From assembly GCA_964304625.1 (NCBI GenBank), contig OZ199839.1, forward strand, positions 10,527,186 to 10,591,185: DNA of 64,000 nucleotides. Direction: 5' to 3'. Made by a program: the position numbers and the translations under genes. This document shows positions 11,253-62,929 of this stretch, piece after piece. Under the pieces are notes generated by a model. The model did no database searches and was not told where the DNA came from. It saw only the letters and a list, made by a program, of their open reading frames with translations. Position 1 is the first letter of the stretch, and each line of letters opens with the position of its first letter. The stretch is from Kudoa neothunni. Its lineage: Eukaryota > Animalia > Cnidaria.

Positions 11253-12846
11253 GCGTGACGAAATTTCACCGGTGAAGTGCGCATACGTAATCAGATGTGC
11301 GCAATAGGAACCGACCTTGAATTGGATGTATTTGCACGAGCGCTTTTCCTCCAGCGTGATGTCAAAGGAGATTGATTCCAATAAACCAAAATACATATTT
11401 CTAAAACCATTAGAAATGGAAGAAAAATTTTTTACAATGGATATATGTATATTAAAGATTATTCTAACAGCGAAAATATGTTTTGGAGATGACAAACTCG
11501 AGAATGCAAATGAAGATTAACAACATTCCCATTAAATGAAATAAAAGAGATTGAGGGAAGGGGAACACATAATCACGTGCTATCTGATAACGAGATTGAA
11601 AGGCTCACCCTCTGGAACACAATTAAAGAATTAGCTGAGAACACTAAATACCCAACAAATAAAAAATACTCAATGGCTACGAGCCATGTTAACTTTAACG
11701 ACTTTCCAATTGTTCCAAAAAAATTAAAGTACCGAAATATACAGAATTCTAGAAAAAGGAATGCGATCGAAATTAACAATGAATCAAATCTTTGCGTAAT
11801 GAGAATTTAATAGTGTATGATTCGGGTTCAAAAGACCTTAATCGAATTATTATATTTTCTACACCAAAAAATCTAATTCATTTAAGTAATGCTAATGTTT
11901 GGATATCTGATGGGACTTTTAAGGTAGCCCCAAAAGAGTTTTCACAGTTATATGTATTATATGTAATTCATGGGAAAATACTTGGGAAAGATTGTCCATT
12001 AGTGTATATATTAATGACAAAACGTACTGAGGCTATGTATAGTAAAGTTTTATCAATTCTTAAAGAAGAGAATAATGTTGTTTTCCTGGAATACTTAGTG
12101 ATAAATTTCGAAACACAGTCGTTTAATGCGTGTAAAAAAACACCAGGAAAAATCTCCACTAGGTTTTTCTTATTCCATTTCGGCCAATGTATTTGGAGAC
12201 GAATTCAAAAGGAAGGATTCGCAAATTGTTATTCTGAGGATGCTCATTTTAAGATGTACATTAAATGTTTTTTCCCTAGAGTTTGTTCCTAAAAGCTCCT
12301 TAAATGATGAATTTCAGAAATTGAAGAATAAGGCAAGTCAATTTGGACTCAGTCATTAATTATTTTGAGAAGAATTTCGTTAAATCACTAAAATGGCCCT
12401 TAGAAATTGGAATGCTTATGATCGCATTAAGTTTGGAATCAATTTAACTTTCAATTCAGCTGGAGCATTTAACGGCCATTTTCATAAAAGATTTGATCAA
12501 TCTCACGCCGGGTTGCACCCATGTATTTAGAAATTAAAAGAGAACCAACTCAACACTGAACAAGAAATTCAGTTTCGTACGTGCAATCCTAACATGGTCT
12601 CTTCAGAAAAATATCAAATTGAGAAGATGGAGAAACTGAAAGATATATGCTCCAATTAAGGAAAATATTATGAAACTTATTATTTAGAAGTGATCGCCAC
12701 AACTTATAATTGGACTCTAGAATAACTAATAAATTATTTTGTTATAATTTATTTTAGCTACAATATCAATGTTCACATACGTTTTAAATAGGAGTCCCAT
12801 TATAGAGTTAACTTTTGCGCGCGCGTCCGGCGAGATTTCGCCATGC
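11253..12846 (+). mobile_element. Mutator-like (MULE) transposon with a pseudogenised transposase
   Basis: ORF fragments IIIFSTPKNL...WISDGTFKVAPKEFSQLY..IHG...PLVYILM...FHFGQCIWRRIQ, with frameshifts and stops. Imperfect TIRs: GCGTGACGAAATTTCACCGG (11253) versus CCGGCGAGATTTCGCCATGC (ending 12846). Confidence 0.85.
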
Positions 12847-14720: not shown

Positions 14721-14895
14721 TTAATGATAGGTTTGTGTAAAAAATCATTATCCAACTCCAACATAACTAGACACATAAATTTGGAAACAATCAACCGATA
14801 TTCACAACCAAATTTCGTGTATAAAGACAAAAAATGTGTCACGCCTGTGCTATCACATTACATTCCGAGGGTTGCCGACAGTCGAAATTGTCACA

Positions 14896-17800
14896 ATGCA
14901 GGGATCGTCTATACGTAAACCGGAACAAGCCATAAAACGGGCCGATGGTAATTCAAAAGTTAAATATTATAATATATCCTATCATATGATTGTTGTAGAA
15001 TACATAAAATATGGTAAATATGGCCGTGCACTTGAAGTGATGTACGAATCATTACAAAGTCGCAAGAATCGTACTTGGCAGCCAGTAGTTGAGGAAATAG
15101 TGCAAAGATTTTTGTCAGTGTGTCTTCGTTTGTTGAACAGTGTGAACTCTAAGGATGTTCTCTATCAGTACAAGCTAACTGCTCAATACACCAATGCTGC
15201 TACAATGGAGTCTACATTTTTGAAATTTGTTCGAAATGCGGAAGATCACTTTCAACAAGCATTGAAAAGAGCTGGTCCCAACATTGATTTGGATCATTTG
15301 GACCGATATGATACAGCCGAATGTCTACTACACAAATCTACATCCAACTATTTATCGATTAAACCATTGGATGAGGTGATGATTATGGATGAGAGTGTAA
15401 TATTGGGGAATGACAGTAGATCGTTGATTGATCTTTGTACCACTCAATGCACTTACAGTCCTGATTATAGTCCTGATTGTTATTTGATTCAATCGATGAA
15501 GTTTCTCTGGGATTGTTATCGGAATGTGTTGGATGTTTGCAAGAACAACCGACATACCGAGAAGATTTACTATGAAGTGTTTTTGATGGCTTGTAAATTT
15601 TGTGTGAAATACAACAAAAGAGTTGAAATGAAAGAGTTGTGTAAACTGTCACGTATCCACGCATATAGTACGATGGCTCCAAACAACAATCCCAACTACG
15701 CTATCGATTTCAATGATAAAAAAAGTGGGTTCTATCAGATAGATTTGAGACTGAAACAACTTGAGATTGCTATCAATCTTGAGTTGTATCCGCAATCGTT
15801 AAAAACAATCGATCTCATCCATCGAATAATGTGTCTCTCTGAGCGCATGAGAAAGCCTTCGGTTGTGGTGATATTTCACAAATTAATGGTGACATTTTTT
15901 GCCAAAGCGAATATGGTGATATATCACGCTCTTGCGTTGCAACGATTTTTCTCAATAGTTGCTTCAATAAAGACCAATGTGACATTTGAAGAGCTTTCGT
16001 TGTAAGTGTTATTTTGCATCATAATAGTTGATGATTGTGTATATTTTGTTGTAGTTTGGCTACCAAAACTCTTCTTGCAACTTTGTCTATTCCTATAAGT
16101 TACGATGTCGAGGAAGATTCAGCCACACTCAAGTCTTGGTACACAGAAAAATCTGAGATAGATCACTCTGAATTTTTCACTATAATCGAGATATTCAAAT
16201 TGAAAACATCTCCCACTCGAAAAAGTCTCATCGGCGAACTCAATTATTTGAATATATTGTCGTATGCGAACGCTGATGCGGTTGAATTGTACAATCTTAT
16301 GGAGATTGAGTCCGTCAATGTATCCATCTGTCAGTCGATCCATTCTTTGCTCGGTAGAATAACTGCTGAAAGTGAGAGTTTCCTAATTAAGAATTCCGGT
16401 CAAAAAACGTCGTTTTTATTCGTCATTCCGGCCGCTGCAAACACCTCATACTATGATGCTATCAAATTAAGGGGGTTATCCCTATTGATGAACAAAGTAA
16501 TGATTATTTGGTCGATATATAATTAAATGATAATAATTGAAACTATTTTCAATCACTTACTAATTTCAACCAATAGAGTAAAGCTTTAGATTATACCAAA
16601 TTTATAATCACTATTATATTTTCTCTTGTTCGTAAAGAATCAATCTTTTATATATGTGTATATTTATCTTATCACTATAGTTAATAATTATTTATTTTAT
16701 AGGCGCTAAATAATCAATTATGCCCAATTCTATAAATAATTTTCTCGTATAATCTATAAATATCCATAGTAGGTGGTGTCATGATGATTTAAAATTTTGA
16801 ATTCACCTATGCGCTTTATTTCTATTAAGGATTGAAATTAAAATGGGCCGTTAGCTACCATTGTTTTGCTTAACAATTATTTTTTAACTTTTCTGTTTGT
16901 TTTATCAATTTTTAATTTTTAATGACGAATAATACAATAATCTAAGGTCCTAGTGTAAATTGTACTAATTGTTTTTTTGTCTAATTCCCATTCTTATAGA
17001 TTAACTCCATTTATAAGTCCATACCATTAGCCAAAGTGTTGGTGTACGTACCATTCTATACCGTTCCACAATTATATCACGTGCTTGTTTTCAAACAAAG
17101 GAATCTTCCATCAAACGTAATCTCTATTTTAATCTTGTTGAAATAGATTTGACTTTATATGATGTATTTAGATCGTGGTGGACGATCAGCTCCAGTGCTT
17201 ACATTTCGCTAATACAGACACATTCAATTATGTTTCCGAATCGACGCCTATGGATTTGTTGTATAGGTTGGAGACGTTTTTGGATGGTATCTTCTATGAA
17301 AATCATATAGTGCCACAATTGGTAAGTTTATTATCAAGCAAGCTTATTGGATTTAAAAGTAGAACTAATTGCGAATTGTGAGGTCTATTGGGTTACTCAT
17401 GGTGCTGTTAATCGGATTTAAATTAGGAAATGACTATTGTCGTACTAATTGATATTTAGGTGTCATTAGTTTTAACTATTTCTGACCCCCATGAACAAAG
17501 GGATAAGCCAGAAATAATTAGATATGGAAGATTTTGAAATATTAAATCTACAAGCGGCTTATAACTTGTGAATAAAAAATTCCTATGATTAAAAATAGTA
17601 TTACGTTTGCATATACGCATATACATACGAATTTAGGATCAAATAAATGTAATCGTTAAGGTTTCGTGTTCAAGCGATTTTAAACATTTTTGAAAATTTT
17701 ACTTATATTTTTTGCGTGTAGCGTTATGAATGTTATACTGAAATTATAAAATCATTGTTAAAATGCCGTGCTCTCTGGCTTCCTTTATTTAAATTATTAA

Positions 17801-27905: not shown

Positions 27906-29539
27906 CTAACAATGATTATCTAAGAAATCCTGTATCAATCCTTGGTAAGTTCTCCCGTTTAGATATTTGTTTTTAAAGTCGTCAAAGGTACAATGCTTAT
28001 TGTGGATGCGGCATGATTCCGTGCACAACTCTGATTCACAAGTTACATCCATACCATTATGGAGAATTCTTAAATAGGAACCATGATCAATATTATTACT
28101 ATCCCAGAGTTCAAAAGTTAGTCTAGATGCAAACGACGGCCATAAATGGAATTTTTGGGGTAGTCTTAACGCCATTATCAGTGGTAGAATAGTGTAATCG
28201 TGAGCACTGTCAACAACAATTGGGAGATATCCTCTAGAGATATCTTTGAGATTTCGAGTGATTTCGAAATTTTTCAAAAAATTTAATACAACCATTCTGA
28301 TCTCAACTTCAGGGTCCATATAAAGATGCTTTTGTTGTTTATGCAGATCCGACAGATAAATCAGTTTGGTACGTATTTTATGCGGCAACGATCCGCTAAG
28401 GATGTTAGATATGTGGCTTCGATGGTGACAAGTCATGACATAGATTCTACCGGTGAGTCTAAATCAACAACATTTGAAGATTAAAGATTTATTAAATATC
28501 ACAATTGAGGGAGAATAAAATCACTTCGATAAAAGGTCGGCGTTTGTTAACATTTTAGAGTTTTCAAGAGGATCTTCATCAAATAATTTGCGCATCTCAG
28601 GATGCAGCACAATTTGTTTGTAAAGATCGATAAAATGTTCCGACGGAATATAGTTGTTTGAGAAATTACTCAATTTCTTGTTTATTCGGTCACAATTGAT
28701 TGATTTTCCCGTAGCAGGATCAATCAAAAGTAGTCCAGTTGCATCGTCGATGATTGCCGCATGAATGTTTGGAATGTTTTTGATAGAAACAAGTTGATCA
28801 TATGTGCTATTGACAAGACCGGCTATGAATGCCAATCCACTCAATCGAGTTCGCATTCTGTTGGTGGTTCTTAAAAATATGTTGTATCTCTCGAAAGCGG
28901 TGTGAGATTTGTATTTTTTGGCGAAAAATTCACCGAGATAAAACATTTGAACAAGGCCTCGAGGCGTGAGCGATCCTAATTCGCAATTGTTGCTGAAGTT
29001 GTACGGTAGCGAAGAAATATTTTTCGTAGGATCAGTGTTTTTGGTGTACATTTTAATATTGCCGAAATTCAGCAACCAATTCTCCACTTGTTTCATTCGA
29101 TTGTGTACAGCTTCGACCGATATAAACGAATCCGCATTACAACTTATATTGGGCGCTAATATCAAGCGATCTAGTTTATCGCTGTTAACCATATCGTTGT
29201 ATGTTCGATCACCATGCCTGAATATTGTCTTAATAGAATATTTAATTCAACGCCGATCAAAAACCAACCAAAAATACATAAACCATAATTAGCTTATTTT
29301 TATCGGTCAGATATGTATTTCCCCCTTCGTTACCTTTGGGGAAGTTATCAATGTTGCAATGACGTAGGTATCTATATTTCAGAGAGCATGTGTGACTGTT
29401 GTAATCGTAAATAACTTCAACAAGTATGATTAAACGTTGACAAACAAAAATAATGCTTCGACTTACAATATGCTATCAGAATAGTTGCTATACTTATAGT
29501 AAGTTTTAAAATCAGTTGTTTGTCCTTTTTCCAATCCAT
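27906..29539 (-). CDS. PXYLP1: 2-phosphoxylose phosphatase 1-like (ACPL2) histidine acid phosphatase, type II membrane protein, multi-exon
   Basis: Start MDWKKDKQLILKLTISIATILIAY (N-terminal TM). Motifs HCN..P...EG, catalytic RHGDRT, CELGSLTPRGLVQ, SAHDYTILP, PSFASRLTFELW and LRILHNGMDVT appear in the PXYLP1 order. Confidence 0.82.
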
Positions 29540-33110: not shown

Positions 33111-35478
33111 CCTTCAAAGTATCTTTGAAGTCCATTGGACCCCAGCACGAATGTCGTGGAGGTTTTGCGGATCATTCGTTGTCTAAAATGCCGACTTTAC
33201 CATCTTTATATCTCCAAAATTTAATTAATGTTGGAGATATTTTGTAATCATTTGAGATCTCTCTCTTATCGAGATTTTATATCAATTATATACACATGGC
33301 GTTTTATGGGGTCCAGCGAACCACACATTTTTTTTCTTATAATAATTTCTATCGTTGCAATCTATTAGAAAATTTGGGTTTATTGGTTTCCGTAGGTGTG
33401 TGATTTCACCCGTTTGCATCTTTGTTTTGAAATGGAAGAGATTGACCGCCAATTTCCAACTACCGATGAATCTGATTTCAGCGAACTTGAAGATGATTAT
33501 TTGGATGATTTTGATCACAACAATTTATACGTGGATAAAAATGTGCTGTGAACATCCGCTATCCCAACCACTACAAAATCTAGAAAAGAAAATGCGATGA
33601 CGAAAAATCCAGACATAACTGCATATGAAAACTCACGGGTTGGTGATATTAATGATTGTTTTACTTTATCCCCCAATGGTGAATTTGATCGGATCGTCAT
33701 TGCAAACACTAACAAATATGGAGCTTTTCATTATTGTGAGAAATGGAAAATGCTAAATATTATTTAATTTAAAGCGTATCTTGGTATTTTAATTTACATG
33801 TAAATATTCCAATCCAAAATGGAATCACTCAAACAATTATGGAGTATTGATAAAGGGCGTGAGATTTTCCGAAAGATTATGCCATTGACCAGGTTTACAC
33901 GGATTAACAGAAGCCTCCATTTTGATAACTATGAGACTAGAGAAATGTGTAAGGTCAGCGACAAATTCTGCTACATAGGGGACGTATTTGAAGAATGGAA
34001 AAATATTTTACCTATGAGTTTAATTCCGCATGATGATCTAACAGTTGATGAACAACTAGTTGCGTGTCGTGGTAGATATTCGTTTAAACAATATATGCCT
34101 TCCAAACCAGCTGTGTATGGCATAAAGTTTTTTGTTCTAACAGACCCAATCACCAATTTAGCCCACACTATATCTGTCTATCTCGGTGGAAACAAAAATG
34201 CTCAAAGAGCAAAAAATGTTGGAGAAAATGCCGTTTTGAACCTTCGTTCTTATTTAAAAGAAACCGGTCGAAACATCCTATGTGATAACTTTTTCACATC
34301 GGTTTCATTGGGGTAAAAACTTATTGATCTAGATTTAACATTGTTAGGAACACTCAGACATAATGAAAGAGACATCCCGCCTATTTTAAAACCCCGAAAA
34401 TCAAGAAAGATTCTTTCCGTTATTTTTATTATTGTATTAATTGGAAAAAATATCTTATTATCATATGCACCAAAAAAGAATACGGCAGTTATTTTACTAG
34501 CTACATCTTCCAACAGCACAAATATTACAGATGATAAAACAAACAAACCTGAAGTTATTGTGGATTACAATAAAACCAAAGGAGGCTTGGATACGATCGA
34601 CCGAATATTGTCAATGACGAGCGTTAAAAGATATACCAAAAGGTGGCCAATAGTGATTTTTTACAACATGATTGATATAAGCCTGGTAAATTCCTATTAC
34701 TTATACAGAGTCATTTTAAAGAACCCCAATATCTCAAGAAATCAGTAATTGGAACAGTTGGCAGATTTATTAATCGAACCTTTTATTGGCGGCGATGAAT
34801 CTTTTCCGTTCGATGAAAATACTCTCTTTGCATCGAAGAAAAGGTGTATCATTTGTTGTAACTGTGTAGATCAACCTAAAAATTGATTTAAACTCCTATT
34901 TTATTTATTAGTTTGTTCGTGTTGATACATTTTTCAATCATAAATGTAAAATTGCAGTAGATCATAATGCAACGTGTATATCTAAATAGCCAATGTTAAC
35001 AAAATTAGGTGTCTTTGTGATTTTTATATGTGAGGTGATAGAAATAAAAAGTTTGAAACGCATAAATATATTTATAACTTTAGGGACGTTTTATATTTGA
35101 AGCTTTACGAAAATATTGAAGGTAAATTCTAATAAAACCATAATTGATAAAAACTGTACCAGCTGACTTTTAAGTATACCAATGTTAATTTTTTTCTAAT
35201 GATAATTTGTATATAACATTTTTCATTATAAAAAACGATTTAATCGAACTAAATTAGAGAAACAACTAAAATAATCGTAATTTGTTGTTCGGTAATTTTC
35301 GGTTGTGTCGGAAATGCAATATTTTGGAATTATTATTTTTTCTCTACGATAGAATTTTTGTAAATAATAAGAAATTTCTTTTTACAATTTTTGAAACGGA
35401 ATAAACGAATAAAAACCTGGGGTCCATTGGAACCCAAAAAACGCTCGATGTATAGGCGGTTTTGGCAAGCTCAGAAGG
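33111..35478 (+). mobile_element. piggyBac transposon (second family), transposase pseudogene
   Basis: TTAA|CCTTC ... GAAGG|TTAA, with the subterminal palindrome GTCCATTGGAC(C) at both ends. ORF fragments LTVDEQLVACRGR.SFKQYMPSKPA.YGIK, GRNILCDNFFTS and DYNKTKGGLDTID..KRWP, interrupted by stops. Confidence 0.92.
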
Positions 35479-54810: not shown

Positions 54811-55274
54811 GGTTGTGCGCTTGCGTGAACATTTGCTAAAAGAATTTTAAATTTTAATTAATTTTTTTCCATACATTAAATCCAATGAAATAATTATACT
54901 ATTATTTTATCTAATTATTTAAATTATTCAATTTGATATTTAAAATTTATGTAGCTGTGTGTCAGTAATAGTGTAGTTTGGCTTATGACAAATAACAGGA
55001 CATTCATTTGAGCGGTAAACTTGTATTTATTCTAATTTCATCAAGAAAATTCAGGAAAATTGATATTGCTGCATTAGGTAACCGATTTTGCATAATCCCT
55101 CCCGGATCGTGAAAGAAATAACATACCATTATTGGAATGTTAAAGAAAAAATTGGAGTCTTTTTTTATCGAGATAACACAAATAAATAAAAATTCTATCG
55201 CACACAAAAACACAGTGATACTTGGTTTTTTTTTGGAGAAATCAATGATTTTGGATTGTGTCATATTTGGACCA

Positions 55275-55280
<6 letters not shown>

Positions 55281-55318
<38 letters not shown>
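55281..55318. repeat. (AT)19 microsatellite
   Basis: Read directly from the sequence. Confidence 0.95.
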
Positions 55319-55320
<2 letters not shown>

Positions 55321-55655
55321 ACTTCCAATTCTAACAACAATCGAAAACGATAGAAATTTGCTAAACTAGTGAGAAAATTTTATTCTTTTTTCGGAGCGTG
55401 TCATTTAGATTTTTTATGTTTGATATGTTGAAATTTAAAATAGTAGTTATCTCAATGTTTTTTAACCCTCTAATGCAAAGGTCACCAAAGTTTTTAATTC
55501 ACGGAACAAATTTCTGATTTGCATAAGTTTCGAAAAGCTGAGATCAAAATGAAATGAAACAAATAATGAATTTGAACGTGAAACTGATTCTTTTAGCGGG
55601 ATTTAGTATATTTCAACGTTGAGACCAGACAATGCCCGTTCGTGTGCGGGGATGA

Positions 55656-56685: not shown

Positions 56686-59600
56686 ATACCAAAATGATAT
56701 TATATAGATGAAATCAATATTAAATTTTGAGCGAAGAAAAATATGAGACATTGAATACAAACAATTACGATATTTACCTTTATTTAATGGAATTTTTGAG
56801 GTTCGTTATCTTATATCATAATTTCATATTTTATTACCAAATAAAAATTTGATATCAGTGTTTTTTTCAAAGATAATTAAATTGATTTAGGAAACAGAAC
56901 CTTGCCATATTAAGTTGCGCTATAGCAAATTTGTCTAGACGTTTTTTAGAATGTTAAAAATAATTTCAAACCCTAATTTTATAAGTCTAATAATGAGGAA
57001 TGAATTAAATTCACTCCAAAAGTGGCTTATTTTTAATATTATTAGTATAAACTATTAATTTTCTTAATGTGTTTAGTTAAAATCTATATCTAAACTTGGA
57101 TAAAATTTTTCCAGCGTATGAAAATCCCGTTCTGATATTGAGCTGGATGTTGGTCGGCTGTACACGTTAGTTGCGATATTTCTAAGATTTTCTTTCTTTG
57201 AGTTTTCCCAATAAATTAAATGAGTGGATTTTCGTAAACTTGGTTGACTTTTTATGGGATGTACATTTGAATTTCTGAGTGAAAATCTTCTGAGTCACTA
57301 TCCAATCATAACATATTTAGTGGTTTTTCGAAGGTTCCGGACTCTTTGGGATTAATTCTAAAATTTTTTTAATATTTGTTACAAGCAAAGATTTACCATC
57401 AAATTTGTTTTTTAGCAGGACGATTTTCTAGCACAACATTAATGTCCTATATCGATCGCTGAGACCTCTCCATGGTCAAGTAGCTGAGCCCCATTGTATT
57501 TTCATTGGTAATTTTGACTATAAATCTGCCGTCTTATGACCAGATCCGCACAGTTTGTCAACATTTACCCCTAGTATGGATAAATCGGATGTGTCGTTTG
57601 TACTGAGATCCCAAGCTACACATAATAAACAGATCGAAATTAGATATTATAACGAAAGTAAAATTTATTTATAAACTCATTAACGATAAAAAATTTAATC
57701 AATTTATTAAAATACATAAATATCAATTATTTAAATTCAGATTATAACAGTTTTATCAAGCAGAATTATGAGAGATTAAGATAGTGTATAGTTATGTATA
57801 TCAATTTTACATAAATTTAATACATAAAATATCTTGAGATATAATAGCGTGAAGGCGGTGAGCAGCTCATCTTATTGTGTTGAACTCTCTTAGATCAGAT
57901 TTTATTTATATTTTCTGCAGTGTGTTTTACAGGAAAATAGATCATGTCATATTGGAAATGTTGAAGGGTGAAATTTTTAACAAATAACACTGATATATCA
58001 ATGAGTGTATGAATGGATTTTGACATTATCACTACAAATATCAACTGTTAAGTACATACTATTGTGATTGATTGTTTTATTTAATTTTCCTATTTTTAAA
58101 TACATGCGCTCTTACTCATTCATAATTATTTTTTTAACGCATTTTTTGGATAAAATCTTAAGCTTAGCATTAGGTTCATTGACCTTTTCTTTTTGTCTTT
58201 TTTGAGATATAATTAGTCGAAAGTTTGTTCTCTATTAGATAATGATATGCATAAATAATAATTTTTAAATAGTAGAATATTTAATATTTTAGCGCCAAAT
58301 ATCAGACGTAAATATTCGCCCATGAGTGAAACGTTGAATATAATAGATTTTTGTTTAAATTTATATAATATTTCATGAAAATTTATTTTAACAACAAAAT
58401 CTAATAAAATTAATTATGACGCTTATTAACGTTTAATTCTTACTTGCTGTATAGTCTATTTAAAAAATTGTAGATTGAAATAGTTAATTAATTTTCCGTA
58501 AAATTTGGCACTAGACTATTGTTAACAGACTTATTTCAGGTTCATTTACGTGTGAATCGTTCACGATATAGTTTTGAGAGAGATCTCTATAACAAAGAAT
58601 CGTTATATTACGCAAGAAGTATGCTCAGAGGTAAATTTTGTTGCTGACTCAAAGTATGAGTCTCGGACCCTCAGCAATTGTCTCTCTGAATTAATTTATT
58701 ATTTTTAATAGATTAAGAGACATTTTTCAATAGAAAATATTTAATATCTCGGAAAAGTCTGAAATTTGCACTAAATTAAAAAAATCATATCTGATTAATT
58801 TTCTGTTTTAGGGGTCTCATAAGTTTTTTAGCGCCTTCAGAATAAAATGTAAAATTCACTTCATCATTCATAAAAAGTGGACCGAAAGTTTGAGTCTTTA
58901 CATGAGATGTACGCCTGATATGAATTTAAAAGTGCGAATTTGGAAGATAATAATTTGAATATAATGAAAATAATAGGTTAATCCTCTTTGCTGCAAATGT
59001 TTTCGTCGTGATATTTTTAATCTTTAGGATTTCAATGAAATCAATATATTTTAACGCAAACAGTCAGTTACTAGCTATATGATGCATACTCGAAGTTTAA
59101 TTGTGTGATGGTTGACAGTTCTTATTTATCCTCAGTTTACTTAATTCAATAATTCATGATATTTATAAGAAAACTTTCATATTTAAAATAAATAATATCG
59201 CGCTCATCTTGAATAGAAATTTCCAATATTGTCTCCGCTGAGATAGTTGAGTTTCGGATAGTAGATAAGTAGATAAGAGCGGCGCCGACAATTCAATGAT
59301 CACGAGGACCCCCTTTAGAAACGAATACTTTGCAATATCGTTACCAAAGGAGTATTATACTGTTGTTTCTAGGATTTTCAGTATTGTTTCGATATTGTTG
59401 AATCAGTTAGTACATTGTGATATACTGGTTTGTTTACTTCAATGTATACGGTTACGAATTCGTTTACGATGGTACAACACTGACAAATGTGAGACAAACA
59501 GTCTTCTTACTACCATATCACAACTCCTGTAGCAAGCCATAAAAAGAAATGATAACATACAACAGCACCAAGTCATTCCACTCATTTGAAATGATAAGGA

Positions 59601-59730
59601 TCGATTGTGTGATTTACTTTTGCACAGAGATTATTCTCCTTATTATCGATAGTTCACTATCTGAGGGAGATAACAGCACAATCGATATGAATTCATAGCG
59701 GTATGCGTGCGATTTAGCTCACAAATACTC

Positions 59731-61524
59731 ATGCAGAGGGTTGAGTGGAGTTTTTTCGCGGAAGGCGAAACTTGTTTCATATTTGATTGTGCCTCACAAC
59801 CACTAATATTGAGAGTGAACAAACTTTATAGGAATGGAGAGCTGCCGATTTACAGTGGAATTTCAAAAGATAAAACTACTATTGATTGTCATAAAACCGG
59901 CCAATTCTATAAAGCTGTCCTAAATAGGTTGGTGCCGAAAAAGTATTTGTTGGATGAGGAAAGCTCATTAGAAATCGACGAACAATTAGCCACCGTACTT
60001 AATGTTTCACTTGAGAGAAATCGGCACAAGCTACGACAAGAGAACAGCCGTATAATGGTTGGATCTGTTGGTATCATTATTAAAAATATGGCATGCCACA
60101 ATAATTACGTTGGAGATGGGAATACTCTAACAGACACACCATCGATTATGATTGAAATTAAACCCAAATATGGATTTGTATCAAATAAACAGTTTACTTC
60201 ACCACTTTTCTGTCCGTACAAATGTATACTGTGTCGGTTCTGTATGCACAAGCACGTAAAAGCAGCCAAGGGAAGCAGTGATTATCAGATGAAGGTTTTG
60301 GATGGATATTGCCCTCAGAAATTGTTCTCAAACAAAATACGTGATGTTAAAGATGCTGTGGAAGCTCTGTTTCGACAACCCAATAAAAGCCTAAAGCTAT
60401 TTCTCAATAAAATTCATATTAGAGATGAGTTTGGTAGTTGGAGTGATCAGTTGAGAAAATTGTTGATCCATATATTTTATATGGATTCCAATTCTGGTTA
60501 TAATTGCGTGAACAACGATGAAACAGTTGAATCGTGTACTTTTTTTGATAAACCCATTGAACGAATGAATAAAATTTTCGCACATACCACCAAATGTGTC
60601 GGTTATGAGTCCAGCTTTTGTGATTACAAACCACCAGAAGATTGCATTATTTCACCATTACACAAATGTCGAAGGAATATCGATTTCGAATTGGCTAAAG
60701 AGTTATCTCACCCAAAACTCATGGGTCCCTACGGTGTTCTTGGAATTATCCAAAAACTCCAAAGCGTTGATTTGATTGGTATTGAGCAATTGTATCGATC
60801 TTATGTGAGTTTGATGTCCCAAGAAACCAAGACTTTTCTTGACGATTATGACTCACATGAGTGGAAACAATTGATTGATGGGTTGGTGGCAGGAAAATCG
60901 TTTGAAAAGATTGTCGATAATCATGTCCAAAGCATTATGCTTTATCTTCTCTCTATGGTTTTTCGTGATTGTTCCATTGTTATCAACTTAAAAGCATGCA
61001 ATGATCCTAATTGTGGTGTTGGTCGTGACTCTTTGAATTTGCCAGCTGGTACAAATTGTGTGGTGAATGGACATAATTTTCCTGACATCGTCAATCAGCT
61101 AATTCAGTCCGATCAACCGACTCCTCTAACCAACATTCATATGCATTATGATATAAAAGTTATTGACTGTGATCCAAAAACCCACAAAAATATTCCCTAC
61201 TATTTCCATATGGACCGATATATCGTACGAAATTATGCCTACCTAAAATCGCCATATAGAACCGAGATACCGGTGAATATACGTTTATTTGGACCATTGA
61301 AAGATATTTTCTATTCGTCACACCTGCAAGTTTATCTGCCAAGAACCATTTGCATAAATTATGTGATTAATCTGCTGGTTGAACGACAACCGGACATCCG
61401 ATCGGCATTGTCTTCTTGTTCCTTCTCACACAACTATGAATATTTGTTGATTGGAAAAGATGAACCTTTTGATTTGATCGCTGGTGATGAAATTGGCATT
61501 ATTGAATTAGTAGGAGCCGGTTAA
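59731..61524 (+). CDS. IPPK: Inositol-pentakisphosphate 2-kinase fused to a C-terminal MoaD/MOCS2A-like (ThiS/ubiquitin-fold) domain; single exon
   Basis: IPPK motifs WSFFAEG, IEIKPKYGF, CRFCMHK, YCPQKLFS, RDCSIVI, VIDCDPK and the terminal helix YFHMDRYIVRNY. These are followed in frame by VNIRLFGPLKDIF...FSHNYEY...LIAGDEIGIIELVGAG-stop. Confidence 0.9.
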   Translation: MQRVEWSFFAEGETCFIFDCASQPLILRVNKLYRNGELPIYSGISKDKTTIDCHKTGQFYKAVLNRLVPKKYLLDEESSLEIDEQLATVLNVSLERNRHKLRQENSRIMVGSVGIIIKNMACHNNYVGDGNTLTDTPSIMIEIKPKYGFVSNKQFTSPLFCPYKCILCRFCMHKHVKAAKGSSDYQMKVLDGYCPQKLFSNKIRDVKDAVEALFRQPNKSLKLFLNKIHIRDEFGSWSDQLRKLLIHIFYMDSNSGYNCVNNDETVESCTFFDKPIERMNKIFAHTTKCVGYESSFCDYKPPEDCIISPLHKCRRNIDFELAKELSHPKLMGPYGVLGIIQKLQSVDLIGIEQLYRSYVSLMSQETKTFLDDYDSHEWKQLIDGLVAGKSFEKIVDNHVQSIMLYLLSMVFRDCSIVINLKACNDPNCGVGRDSLNLPAGTNCVVNGHNFPDIVNQLIQSDQPTPLTNIHMHYDIKVIDCDPKTHKNIPYYFHMDRYIVRNYAYLKSPYRTEIPVNIRLFGPLKDIFYSSHLQVYLPRTICINYVINLLVERQPDIRSALSSCSFSHNYEYLLIGKDEPFDLIAGDEIGIIELVGAG

Positions 61525-62061
61525 AAGTTCTTTACATTTGTTTGTGAACGTTTTTCTGATTGTTCGGACTTTTTTGTCATGCACGCATGAAATAAAAATG
61601 AATTTTTATTTATTTAATTTAATTCCTTTTTGAATCCTATGAACTATTCGCGCGTCATATTTTTAAAATAATTATTTAAAAATAATTCCGTGTTGTTTTC
61701 GTTTTTAATGATTTCAAGGGCCCACATATCTATATTTTTGGATCGAATCTAATAAAACCTATTGAAAACACGCTGGTCAATGTATTTATCGTGTCTTTTT
61801 CTTATTGAATTTGTATTCATAAGAAGCATCATATTCTCGTAAACTTCCATGATTTAATGGCGCCCATCGAGAATTCTATTTAGTTTAGAAGTGTTTTATT
61901 TTAATAGTTTTGAATTTTTTCCAATTGGGTGATTTATCTTAAGGCATAATCAAAAATTACGAATTGGCGGTCAATTGTCTCGCCAAATCTGCCAATTTTG
62001 TACGAATTAAGCGACATTACAAATTAGAGATAAGCGTATTGATTAAACATTAAAGTTTTAA

Positions 62062-62929
62062 CCCTCGAATACCTGGAGGTGGCCAATCAGCGCTTATTGT
62101 ATCGATAACTTTTTCAAAATATTTTATTTCCTTTTTTCCCTACGTGTATTTTAGAGTATAATGATGCTTTTAAAAACACTTAAGTAGTGTAGTTGTGCGT
62201 TTAATTTGTTCGCCTAAAAGAAAAAAAATTCACACATACCTGGACATGCTCACCAAATAAAAAATAATGTTTAGAAAGTTGGAATATATATAAAAAGGAT
62301 TTTCAGCAGTGGAATAAACGTTATAAATGTACTTCCAAGCAATGATCTATTTTTGAATTGATATTTTTTGTGTTGTATAACGACTTGATTCTGTTAACTA
62401 ATCGAATCAGGCATGTTATAATTTTGTTAAATTAAATATCAACTAAATGTAGCAAGATAAATATAGTTGTTTTAAGTTTAAATTAGGTAATCTTATCATA
62501 ACTTAGGATTTCAAAACCTAAAAGTCCTTAGACTATATATATTTAACATATTTCTGTCAACAGGGGAAGAGATTTCATTATAAAATCATGGATGTTGAAA
62601 ATATAACAAAACCTTCGCTGTTAAAATAATAATATTTAATAATTATTAAATGATAATAAAACGATTTATTTAAAATTTTCCACGCTATTCAAAATATAAA
62701 CAGGCATAATTATTCCTGTTCTTCGCACTTGCGCAAATAAACGTTACAAAAATGCATCTTTGATTTAATTTTATTGAATTTATTATATTTCAAAATTTAA
62801 AAAATAACGTAAGTAATTATTTTCTTAATCTTAAGTGAAGCGATTTTCCCTTTTTTAATACATTTTTTTGTGTGGTCACAGTTGCCACCTCAAATATTCA
62901 TGCAACTTGATAGCTCAGGCGTTCGAGGG
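62062..62929. mobile_element. Non-autonomous piggyBac-type MITE (about 870 bp)
   Basis: TTAA|CCCTCGAATACCTG ... CAGGCGTTCGAGGG|TTAT (12/14 TIR match). Subterminal GAGGTGGC / GCCACCTC. No ORF. Confidence 0.75.

What the first reader, a model, noticed from the sequence alone, without database searches (positions are those of the whole stretch)
59731..61524. IP6-producing kinase IPPK fused in frame to a MoaD/MOCS2A-like ubiquitin-fold sulfur-carrier domain with a free C-terminal Gly
Seen: the kinase ends at its usual terminal helix (YFHMDRYIVRNY). After a ~10-aa linker the frame continues into an ~85-aa domain (about 61267-61521). There is no stop, no intron signal and no ATG between the two parts, so the small domain has no start codon of its own. 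Known: the domain follows the MOCS2A/MoaD pattern (V-x-V/I-x-x-F-A/G start, F-x-x-x-x-E-Y, GDEI-x-x-I end). Animal MOCS2A is normally a free small protein from the bicistronic MOCS2 locus, activated at its C-terminal Gly by MOCS3/Uba4. No MOCS2B/MoaE is visible nearby. I know of no IPPK-MoaD fusion. Inference: the kinase could be activated or conjugated through a built-in ubiquitin-like tag, could couple IP6 synthesis to sulfur relay, or could use the beta-grasp fold as a docking module (IP6 is a cofactor of cullin-COP9 complexes).
Basis: partly seen in the sequence, partly recalled or inferred. Interest (0 to 1): 0.9.

Follow-up and report, generated by a model that had tools for sequence, protein, structure and literature searches.

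The report
IPPK kinase fused to genome's only MoaD
In this small animal genome the enzyme that makes IP6 runs on, in the same reading frame, into the genome's only detectable copy of the small sulfur-carrier protein needed to build the molybdenum cofactor; this gene arrangement has not been described, and the carrier has an altered business end.

Summary
Window 59731-61524 (+) is one uninterrupted 597-codon ORF.

- **Kinase:** residues 8-496 are an inositol-pentakisphosphate 2-kinase (Pfam E 4.5e-48).
- **Tail:** after an 18-residue linker, residues 515-597 are a MoaD/MOCS2A-family beta-grasp domain. Curated libraries barely see it. A profile I built from 19 independently chosen bacterial MoaDs scores it at 33 bits (E 3e-12; best of 5,000 shuffles 11 bits). 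hhalign gives 97% probability, aligned end to end, so the stop codon falls exactly at MoaD's C-terminus.
- **Assembly:** a short-read contig from a public DNA run matches the junction without any difference.
- **Rest of the genome:** MOCS1A/B, a stand-alone MOCS2B (2.3 Mb away, no upstream MOCS2A cistron), a MOCS3-like E1, gephyrin exons and sulfite oxidase are all present. No other MoaD is detectable and no P-P-x-x-G-G-stop terminus exists.

The tail is most likely this animal's MOCS2A.

Caveats:
- The family's near-invariant PPxSGG end reads ELVGAG.
- No RNA evidence could be obtained.
- No relatives could be reached, so it is open whether the domain acts as a fusion, is released, or is repurposed.

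The parts
59731..61524 (+). Whole ORF: 597 codons plus TAA stop, a single exon, encoding the IPPK-MoaD fusion
   Evidence: no credible intron; DNA contig identical across it
59752..61218 (+). Inositol-pentakisphosphate 2-kinase domain (residues 8-496); EIKPKYGF, CRFCMHKHVK, YCPQKLFS, RDCSI and DCDPK motifs present
   Evidence: Pfam PF06090 E 4.5e-48, model 1-374 of 375; mouse IPPK 5mw8_A E 1.1e-15 with the motifs aligned; only IPPK in the genome
61219..61272 (+). Linker, residues 497-514 (VRNYAYLKSPYRTEIP region), with no stop, no ATG and no intron-like signal
   Evidence: lies between the end of the kinase match and the start of the MoaD match
61273..61521 (+). MoaD/MOCS2A-family beta-grasp domain, residues 515-597
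   Evidence: own MoaD profile 33.3 bits, E 3e-12; shuffles at most 11.1 bits, other ORFs of this genome at most 2.9 bits, hhalign 97.2% over MoaD 1-79; only genome-wide hit of that profile, E 3.6e-6; TIGR01682 sole NCBIfam hit, E 0.16; AF2 pLDDT 92.6 with a MoaD alignment; Foldseek top hits MoaD and human MOCS2A, TM 0.83-0.87
61504..61521 (+). Altered C-terminal tail E-L-V-G-A-G, aligned to the family's P-P-x-S-G-G; only the terminal Gly is kept
   Evidence: alignment A2: P-P and G-G are invariant or nearly invariant in the 19 MoaDs; hhalign aligns the ends exactly

Best explanation
A single-exon gene encodes a complete, apparently catalytically intact IPPK. Its C-terminus continues through an 18-residue linker into a complete MoaD/MOCS2A-family beta-grasp domain that ends, as free MoaD does, in a terminal glycine directly followed by the stop codon. 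This domain is the only MoaD homologue in the 40-Mb genome. The genome otherwise keeps the whole molybdenum-cofactor pathway and a molybdoenzyme, and its MOCS2B gene has lost the upstream MOCS2A cistron typical of animals. Most likely (inferred) MOCS2A was relocated and captured by IPPK, and the tail still works as the sulfur carrier. A MOCS3-type E1 would adenylate and thiocarboxylate the terminal Gly, and the tail would then insert it into MOCS2B to convert cPMP to molybdopterin. Because the Ubl sits at the C-terminal end of the fusion, no cleavage is needed to expose the reactive glycine. Shown here: the ORF, both domain identities, the uniqueness of the tail in the genome, and the presence of the partner genes. 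Inferred: expression as one polypeptide, thiocarboxylation, and activity despite the ELVGAG end.
For: The ORF is continuous and the junction is confirmed by a DNA contig. The kinase is identified by Pfam E 4.5e-48 and the motifs align to mouse IPPK. The tail matches a MoaD profile built from 19 bacterial MoaDs chosen without reference to it: 33.3 bits, E 3e-12, against at most 11.1 bits for 5,000 shuffles and at most 2.9 bits for 276 other ORF segments of this genome. hhalign gives 97.2%, E 3e-11, end to end. The only NCBIfam hit is moaD and the only PDB sequence hit is a MoaD. The fold model matches MoaD and human MOCS2A best. Genome-wide, the MoaD profile hits only this tail. There is no ThiS or TIGR01682 hit elsewhere, no paralogue of the tail, and no real P-P-x-x-G-G-stop terminus. 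The partners are present: MOCS2B is intact with both catalytic lysines and has no MOCS2A upstream. Also present are MOCS1B and MOCS1A, a MOCS3/Uba4-like E1, gephyrin-E exons and sulfite oxidase.
Against: The four most conserved MoaD positions are the C-terminal P-P..G-G, and the tail keeps only the last Gly. For E. coli MoaD both glycines are reported essential for MPT synthase activity (PMC4326299, citing Schmitz 2007). Urm1 of the same genome keeps ...HGG, so the change is specific to this domain. There is no RNA evidence: three metatranscriptome runs with the species label hold no read of the locus. No orthologue could be found, so there is no evidence of conservation or purifying selection. 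The tail fails the curated Pfam and TIGR cut-offs. A free MOCS2A split by introns, or lying in a withheld (N-masked) stretch, could have escaped the exon-by-exon searches.
Confidence: 0.55

Rival explanations
1. The fusion exists only at the ORF level. The MoaD domain is made or released as a small protein, either from an internal transcript translated from an in-frame Met near the kinase end (HMDRYIV..., about 105 aa) or by proteolysis in the linker. It then acts as an ordinary free MOCS2A. IPPK merely donates promoter and frame, a replacement for the bicistronic MOCS2 arrangement.
For: Animal MOCS2A is normally expressed from shared or overlapping transcripts, and this genome's MOCS2B has lost that partner. 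In-frame Met codons exist 22 and about 45 residues upstream of the domain. An 18-residue linker that matches neither the kinase model nor the MoaD profile separates the domains.
Against: There is no ATG within the domain or the linker. No promoter, splice-acceptor or transcript evidence was obtained. A 20-residue N-terminal extension is not typical of MOCS2A.
Confidence: 0.2
2. The MoaD domain is no longer a sulfur carrier. It is a decaying relic, or a beta-grasp module repurposed for docking, stability or regulation of IPPK. Moco synthesis then relies on an undetected MoaD or is being lost.
For: P-P is replaced by E-L and the penultimate Gly by Ala, exactly at the family's invariant positions. 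Reported in-vitro data give both glycines of E. coli MoaD as essential. The domain falls below the curated family cut-offs.
Against: The whole domain stays open and alignable end to end, with the stop codon kept exactly after the terminal Gly. All other pathway genes look intact, which requires a MoaD, and none other is found. Human MOCS2A Gly88Ala and Ser86Ile are only hypomorphic in patients (PMC13104280). ThiS, Urm1 and ubiquitin are activated by E1s without a P-P motif (general knowledge).
Confidence: 0.2
3. Artefact: an assembly or polishing error removed a stop or shifted the frame, or an unrecognised intron separates two genes.
For: Only that no transcript data exist for the locus.
Against: A short-read contig from run X1 is identical over 58500-62087, and no variant, insertion or deletion was reported. 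There are no intron-like signals. The MoaD homology is in the same frame as the kinase and has no start codon of its own.
Confidence: 0.03

Closest known systems
MOCS2A / MoaD, the small sulfur-carrier subunit of molybdopterin synthase
   Same: About 80-residue beta-grasp domain, alignable end to end (V-x-V-x-x-F start, N-x-E-Y, G-D-E-I). The terminal Gly is followed by the stop codon. MOCS2B and a MOCS3-type E1 are present in the genome.
   Different: It is not a free small protein and does not come from a MOCS2A/MOCS2B bicistron. It is fused behind a 514-residue kinase plus linker. PPxSGG reads ELVGAG. It scores below the curated Pfam and TIGRFAM cut-offs.
MoaD-MoaE fusions (M. tuberculosis MoaX, D. 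radiodurans MoaD-MoaE; also L024 and L025 found here)
   Same: MoaD is encoded inside a larger polypeptide.
   Different: In those fusions MoaD is N-terminal, is fused to its own partner, and must be cleaved after G-G to be active (PMC4326299). Here MoaD is C-terminal, so its Gly is already free, and the fusion partner is an unrelated inositol-phosphate kinase.
Inositol-pentakisphosphate 2-kinase (IPPK/Ipk1) of animals
   Same: Full-length Pfam match, the conserved catalytic and zinc-site-like motifs, single copy.
   Different: The IPPKs I could compare end about 5-25 residues after the last helix. None of the nearest ESM Atlas IPPK clusters (507-581 aa, mostly arthropod) carries a ThiS/MoaD domain.
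Archaeal SAMP1 and eukaryotic Urm1 (sulfur carriers that also conjugate to proteins)
   Same: Beta-grasp fold with a reactive C-terminal Gly, activated by a MoeB/Uba4-type E1. SAMP1 ranks 5th in the fold search.
   Different: Sequence and fold searches rank MoaD/MOCS2A first. Conjugation by MOCS2A is not known (PMC5372717), and nothing here tests it.
Ubiquitin-ribosomal-protein fusion genes (UBA52, RPS27A)
   Same: A small Ubl expressed as part of a housekeeping gene's ORF.
   Different: There the Ubl is N-terminal and is released by cleavage after G-G. Here it is C-terminal and needs no processing.

Membership tests
MoaD/MOCS2A (ThiS/MoaD beta-grasp sulfur carriers; PF02597, TIGR01682) | Significant full-length sequence match to a MoaD profile | tested here: met
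   Own 19-sequence profile: 33.3 bits, E 3e-12, model 1-73 of 79. Empirical nulls at most 11.1 and 2.9 bits; hhalign 97.2% over positions 1-79. Genome-wide E 3.6e-6.
MoaD/MOCS2A (ThiS/MoaD beta-grasp sulfur carriers; PF02597, TIGR01682) | Score above the curated family cut-offs | tested here: not met
   No PF02597 hit at E up to 10. TIGR01682 scores 12.9 bits against a cut-off of 66.15, although it is the only NCBIfam hit.
MoaD/MOCS2A (ThiS/MoaD beta-grasp sulfur carriers; PF02597, TIGR01682) | Beta-grasp fold closest to MoaD structures | tested here: met
   AF2 pLDDT 92.6. Foldseek top hits 6jbz_B, 5mpo_A/B (human MOCS2A) and 2q5w_D, TM 0.75-0.87. Caveat: the MSA consisted of MoaDs, and the single-sequence model was uninformative (pLDDT 42).
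MoaD/MOCS2A (ThiS/MoaD beta-grasp sulfur carriers; PF02597, TIGR01682) | C-terminal Gly-Gly, preceded by P-P in MoaD | tested here: not met
   The tail ends E-L-V-G-A-G. In 19 MoaDs the G-G and the second P are invariant and the first P is nearly invariant.
MoaD/MOCS2A (ThiS/MoaD beta-grasp sulfur carriers; PF02597, TIGR01682) | Free carboxy-terminal glycine at the family's last position | tested here: met
   TAA directly follows Gly597, and hhalign aligns residue 93 of the tail to position 79 of 79.
MoaD/MOCS2A (ThiS/MoaD beta-grasp sulfur carriers; PF02597, TIGR01682) | Partner proteins MoaE/MOCS2B and MoeB/MOCS3 encoded in the genome | tested here: met
   MoaE E 5.8e-22, with the catalytic K..K motif aligned to 2omd and 5mpo_C. 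The Uba4-specific exon matches only Uba4 chains.
MoaD/MOCS2A (ThiS/MoaD beta-grasp sulfur carriers; PF02597, TIGR01682) | Thiocarboxylation and sulfur transfer to cPMP | not testable with these tools
   Needs biochemistry.
Animal bicistronic MOCS2 locus | MOCS2A ORF immediately upstream of and overlapping MOCS2B | tested here: not met
   The DNA upstream of MOCS2B is AT-rich non-coding with no MoaD-like ORF. The MoaD domain lies 2.28 Mb away.
Inositol-pentakisphosphate 2-kinase (PF06090) | Full-length match above the cut-off, with catalytic motifs | tested here: met
   164.9 bits against a cut-off of 22.7, model 1-374 of 375. EIKPK, RFCMH..K, DCSI and D-x-D-x-K align to mouse IPPK.
Inositol-pentakisphosphate 2-kinase (PF06090) | IP5 2-kinase activity | not testable with these tools
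   Needs an enzyme assay.

The most novel reading that the evidence does not exclude
The intact roughly 69-kDa IPPK-MoaD polypeptide is itself the small subunit of this animal's molybdopterin synthase, and/or an E1-activatable kinase. MOCS3 would thiocarboxylate the kinase's own C-terminus, which would physically tie IP6 synthesis to Moco synthesis or allow Urm1/SAMP-like conjugation of IPPK. It would do this with a non-canonical G-A-G terminus, showing that the P-P..G-G rule of MoaD is not absolute.
Probability: 0.3. Interest if true: 0.8.

Novelty: new variant of a known kind. Interest (0 to 1): 0.6.

Why it matters
MoaD/MOCS2A is among the most conserved small proteins of cofactor biosynthesis, and its P-P-x-x-G-G end is treated as essential. 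An animal whose only MoaD is a C-terminal domain of an unrelated kinase, with that end rewritten, would matter in three ways:

- It is a natural experiment on what the MOCS3 and MOCS2B active sites tolerate.
- It would be the first case I know of in which a sulfur-carrier Ubl is supplied at the C-terminus of a large enzyme, with no processing needed.
- It shows how compact genomes re-house tiny genes that lose their bicistronic partner.

If the fusion acts as one polypeptide, it also raises a testable link between inositol-phosphate and molybdenum-cofactor metabolism. If it is merely a carrier for expression, it is a neat but lineage-specific curiosity.

Tried and rejected
- **Word-indexed protein search:** the whole protein, the conserved kinase motifs and this genome's MOCS2B all returned nothing. 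The lineage is too divergent for that index, so whether relatives carry the fusion is untested.
- **Exhaustive phmmer of the tail against 1.84 billion proteins:** four hits, all internally repetitive proteins or a PKS whose scores are summed over repeats. I rejected them as spurious.
- **ESM Atlas searches:** the feature search with the tail gave no usable hit. With the whole protein it gave arthropod IPPK clusters at 0.84, a lead only. The shape search with the tail model gave only MoaD and MoaD-MoaE clusters.
- **Single-sequence AF2 of the tail:** pLDDT 42, uninformative.
- **RNA evidence:** the three RNA runs with the species label hold no read of the locus, so they are no test.
- **Exact-sequence look-ups and metagenome-contig scan:** nothing found.
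- **A 35-nt GT..AG candidate at 61225-61259:** it would shift the frame, but I rejected it as an intron. Its donor is weak, it has no pyrimidine tract, and it is shorter than the 50-62-nt introns seen here.
- **P-P-x-x-G-G-stop pattern:** three genomic matches, equal to the control count. One has an internal stop and two lie in stop-ridden repeats.
- **L023 long frame ending in MoaD:** a high-GC artefact, not a precedent.
- **Literature:** no paper pairs IPPK with MoaD or MOCS2A.
- **Withheld DNA:** part of the MOCS3-like locus (L012) reads N. I did not try to read or search it.
Full report
**1. The observation**

The ORF listing gives one open frame at 59707..61524 (+), with the first ATG at 59731, encoding 597 aa. 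Pfam places Ins_P5_2-kin on residues 8-496, covering model positions 1-374 of 375 (E 4.5e-48, 164.9 bits). The best solved relative is mouse IPPK (5mw8_A, E 1.1e-15). The EIKPK-GF, CRFCMH-H-K, YCP--L-S, DCSI and D-x-D-x-K motifs align, and the last helix YFHMDRYIVRNY aligns to KLDSKIVNYY.

The kinase is therefore complete and ends where IPPKs end. The frame then runs on for 101 codons to ...GDEIGIIELVGAG-TAA. At the window's base composition, 100 open codons have p = 2.5e-4. The last 93 residues contain no Met.

Real introns in this genome are 50-62 nt with GTAAGT, GTAATT or GTATAG donors and T-rich TTGTAG or TTTAG acceptors, as seen in eIF3a and Urm1. No candidate of that quality lies in the ORF. 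The only GT..AG pair at the junction (61225-61259, 35 nt) has a weak donor and no pyrimidine tract.

A Logan contig of DNA run X1 covers 58500-62087 with 0 differences and 0 gaps, and no variants or indels were listed. The three RNA runs with the same species label are metatranscriptomes that hold no read of this locus, so they say nothing about expression.

**2. Is the tail a MoaD?**

Curated libraries barely see it:
- Pfam gives no ThiS hit at E up to 10.
- The only PDB sequence hit at E up to 10 is S. aureus MoaD, 2q5w_D, E 1.4.
- The only NCBIfam hit among 18,950 models is TIGR01682 moaD, E 0.16, tail 11-87 against model 1-74 of 80.
- An exhaustive phmmer of the tail against 1.84 billion representatives returned only four internally repetitive proteins, which are spurious.

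I therefore built an independent test. This genome's MoaC led to one bacterial genome. Among 201 genomes around that one, TIGR01682 found 19 MoaD genes. I extracted and aligned them without the tail. The results were:
- The resulting HMM scores the tail at 33.3 bits (E 3e-12 for one comparison), model 1-73 of 79. The kinase part scores 0.2 bits.
- The best of 5,000 shuffles of the tail scores 11.1 bits.
- Among 276 six-frame ORF segments of this genome, the next best after the IPPK ORF scores 2.9 bits.
- hhalign gives 97.2% probability, E 3e-11, aligning tail 11-93 to MoaD 1-79. The two C-termini coincide exactly.

With the MoaD alignment as MSA, AlphaFold2 gives pLDDT 92.6 and pTM 0.81 with a beta-grasp topology and a floppy last five residues. 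Foldseek ranks mycobacterial MoaD, human MOCS2A (TM 0.86-0.87) and S. aureus MoaD first, ahead of SAMP1, Urm1, ThiS and ubiquitin. The fold result is not independent of the MSA, and the single-sequence model was uninformative. The sequence statistics do not share that weakness.

Conclusion: residues 515-597 are a bona fide MoaD-family domain.

**3. What is unusual in the domain**

In the 19 MoaDs the only invariant or nearly invariant columns are the C-terminal P-P-x-x-G-G. The tail has E-L-V-G-A-G, so only the terminal Gly survives. Urm1 of the same genome ends ...STLHGG, so this is not a general drift among MOCS3 clients.

PMC4326299, citing Schmitz et al. 2007, reports both glycines of E. 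coli MoaD as essential for MPT synthase activity. PMC13104280 reports that human MOCS2A Gly88Ala and Ser86Ile cause only mild, hypomorphic disease. The altered end therefore lowers the odds of canonical activity but does not remove them.

**4. Genome context**

The assembly is 40.3 Mb in 4 contigs, and the window is C2:10527186-10591185.

| Step or question | Finding |
|---|---|
| MOCS2B (MoaE) | One gene at C2:8309650, 2.28 Mb away; intact 174-aa ORF with ...GHRE... and K-S-K-V-P-I-W-K-K aligned to the catalytic lysines of 2omd and human 5mpo_C |
| Upstream of MOCS2B | AT-rich non-coding DNA, no MOCS2A cistron |
| MOCS1B (MoaC) and MOCS1A (Mob_synth_C) | Adjacent on C2, so the canonical MOCS1 arrangement is kept |
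| MOCS3/Uba4-like E1 | On C1; the GGPCFRCLFP exon matches only Uba4 chains |
| Gephyrin-E | Collinear exons present |
| Sulfite-oxidase-type molybdoenzyme | Present |
| IPPK | Single copy |
| Tail paralogue | None |
| Other ThiS or TIGR01682 hit | None |
| My MoaD profile over the whole genome | Hits only the tail, E 3.6e-6 |
| P-P-x-x-G-G-stop pattern | Three matches, equal to the reversed-pattern control; none is coding |

A complete pathway needs a MoaD, and the IPPK tail is the only candidate. Two caveats apply. The genome searches work exon by exon, and some stretches are withheld (one lies in the MOCS3-like locus, and I left it alone). An intron-split or masked MOCS2A therefore cannot be fully excluded.

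**5. Mechanism**

The best-supported reading (confidence about 0.55) is that MOCS2A lost its place in front of MOCS2B and is now encoded as the C-terminal domain of IPPK. The reactive Gly is at the very end of the polypeptide. Unlike the known MoaD-MoaE fusions, which have MoaD at the N-terminus and require cleavage (PMC4326299; L024 and L025 here), this arrangement leaves the carboxylate free for MOCS3 adenylation and thiocarboxylation and for insertion into MOCS2B. N-terminally extended Ubls are generally accepted by E1 enzymes (general knowledge).

Not shown:
- that the mRNA and the protein are really one unit;
- that the G-A-G end is activated;
- that a 69-kDa small subunit fits MPT synthase.

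Rivals:
- The domain is expressed or released separately, from an internal Met or by linker cleavage (0.2).
- The domain is a relic or a repurposed beta-grasp module (0.2).
- Artefact (0.03).

**6. Comparison and novelty**

The domains are known and the architecture is not.
- No paper in the searchable library pairs IPPK with MoaD or MOCS2A.
- The nearest ESM Atlas IPPK clusters (mostly arthropod, 507-581 aa) carry only PF06090.
- The shape search with the tail model finds only free MoaD and MoaD-MoaE clusters.
- No fusion relative appeared in 1.84 billion proteins, although the tail alone is too divergent to detect distant ones.
- Relatives of this organism could not be reached.

It therefore remains unknown whether the fusion is a species quirk or a clade trait. 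The organism was not identified. The IPPK is animal-type.

I rate the finding as a new variant of a known kind, with interest 0.6. It would surprise a Moco specialist and is directly testable, but it currently rests on one genome with no expression data.

No step needed referral.

Noticed in passing
L001:1459-1983 (G000:C2:8309608-8310132): MOCS2B/MoaE is a stand-alone single-exon gene with a roughly 45-residue C-terminal extension beyond the MoaE domain. It has no MOCS2A cistron upstream, unlike the usual animal bicistronic MOCS2 locus.
   Followed up: partly
window 27906-29192 (-): Two adjacent ORF pieces of a branch-2 histidine phosphatase (His_Phos_2, E 1.4e-11 and 5.8e-7). This is the family that includes MINPP1 and phytases, about 30 kb from the IP6-making kinase. 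I did not determine whether it is an inositol-phosphate phosphatase.
   Followed up: no
window 33819-34316 (+) and 11792-12292 (+): A piggyBac-type transposase fragment (DDE_Tnp_1_7, E 1.5e-28) and a weak MULE transposase-like ORF (E 7e-4).
   Followed up: no
window 14836-16526 (+): An eIF3a gene with short introns (52 and 60 nt; GTAATT/GTAAGT ... TTGTAG). I used it as this genome's intron reference.
   Followed up: partly
L037 and L038 (G000:C1:145464 and C1:176304, minus strand): A stop-ridden non-coding stretch of more than 400 nt is present in two near-identical copies about 31 kb apart, i.e. a dispersed or segmental repeat.
   Followed up: no
L012 (G000:C1:13350751-13354293, minus strand): A MOCS3/Uba4-like multi-exon gene. 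A stretch in its 3' part (the expected rhodanese region) is withheld and reads N. I left it unread.
   Followed up: partly
L024 and L025 (bacterial genomes G172, G190): Natural MoaD-MoaE fusions in which G-G is followed by a linker and a MoaE domain (the MoaX type). They turned up in 2 of the 19 MoaD loci sampled.
   Followed up: partly
window 55004-55321 (-): A (TA)n-type microsatellite that reads as an IYIYIY... run in one frame. It is simple sequence, not a gene.
   Followed up: no
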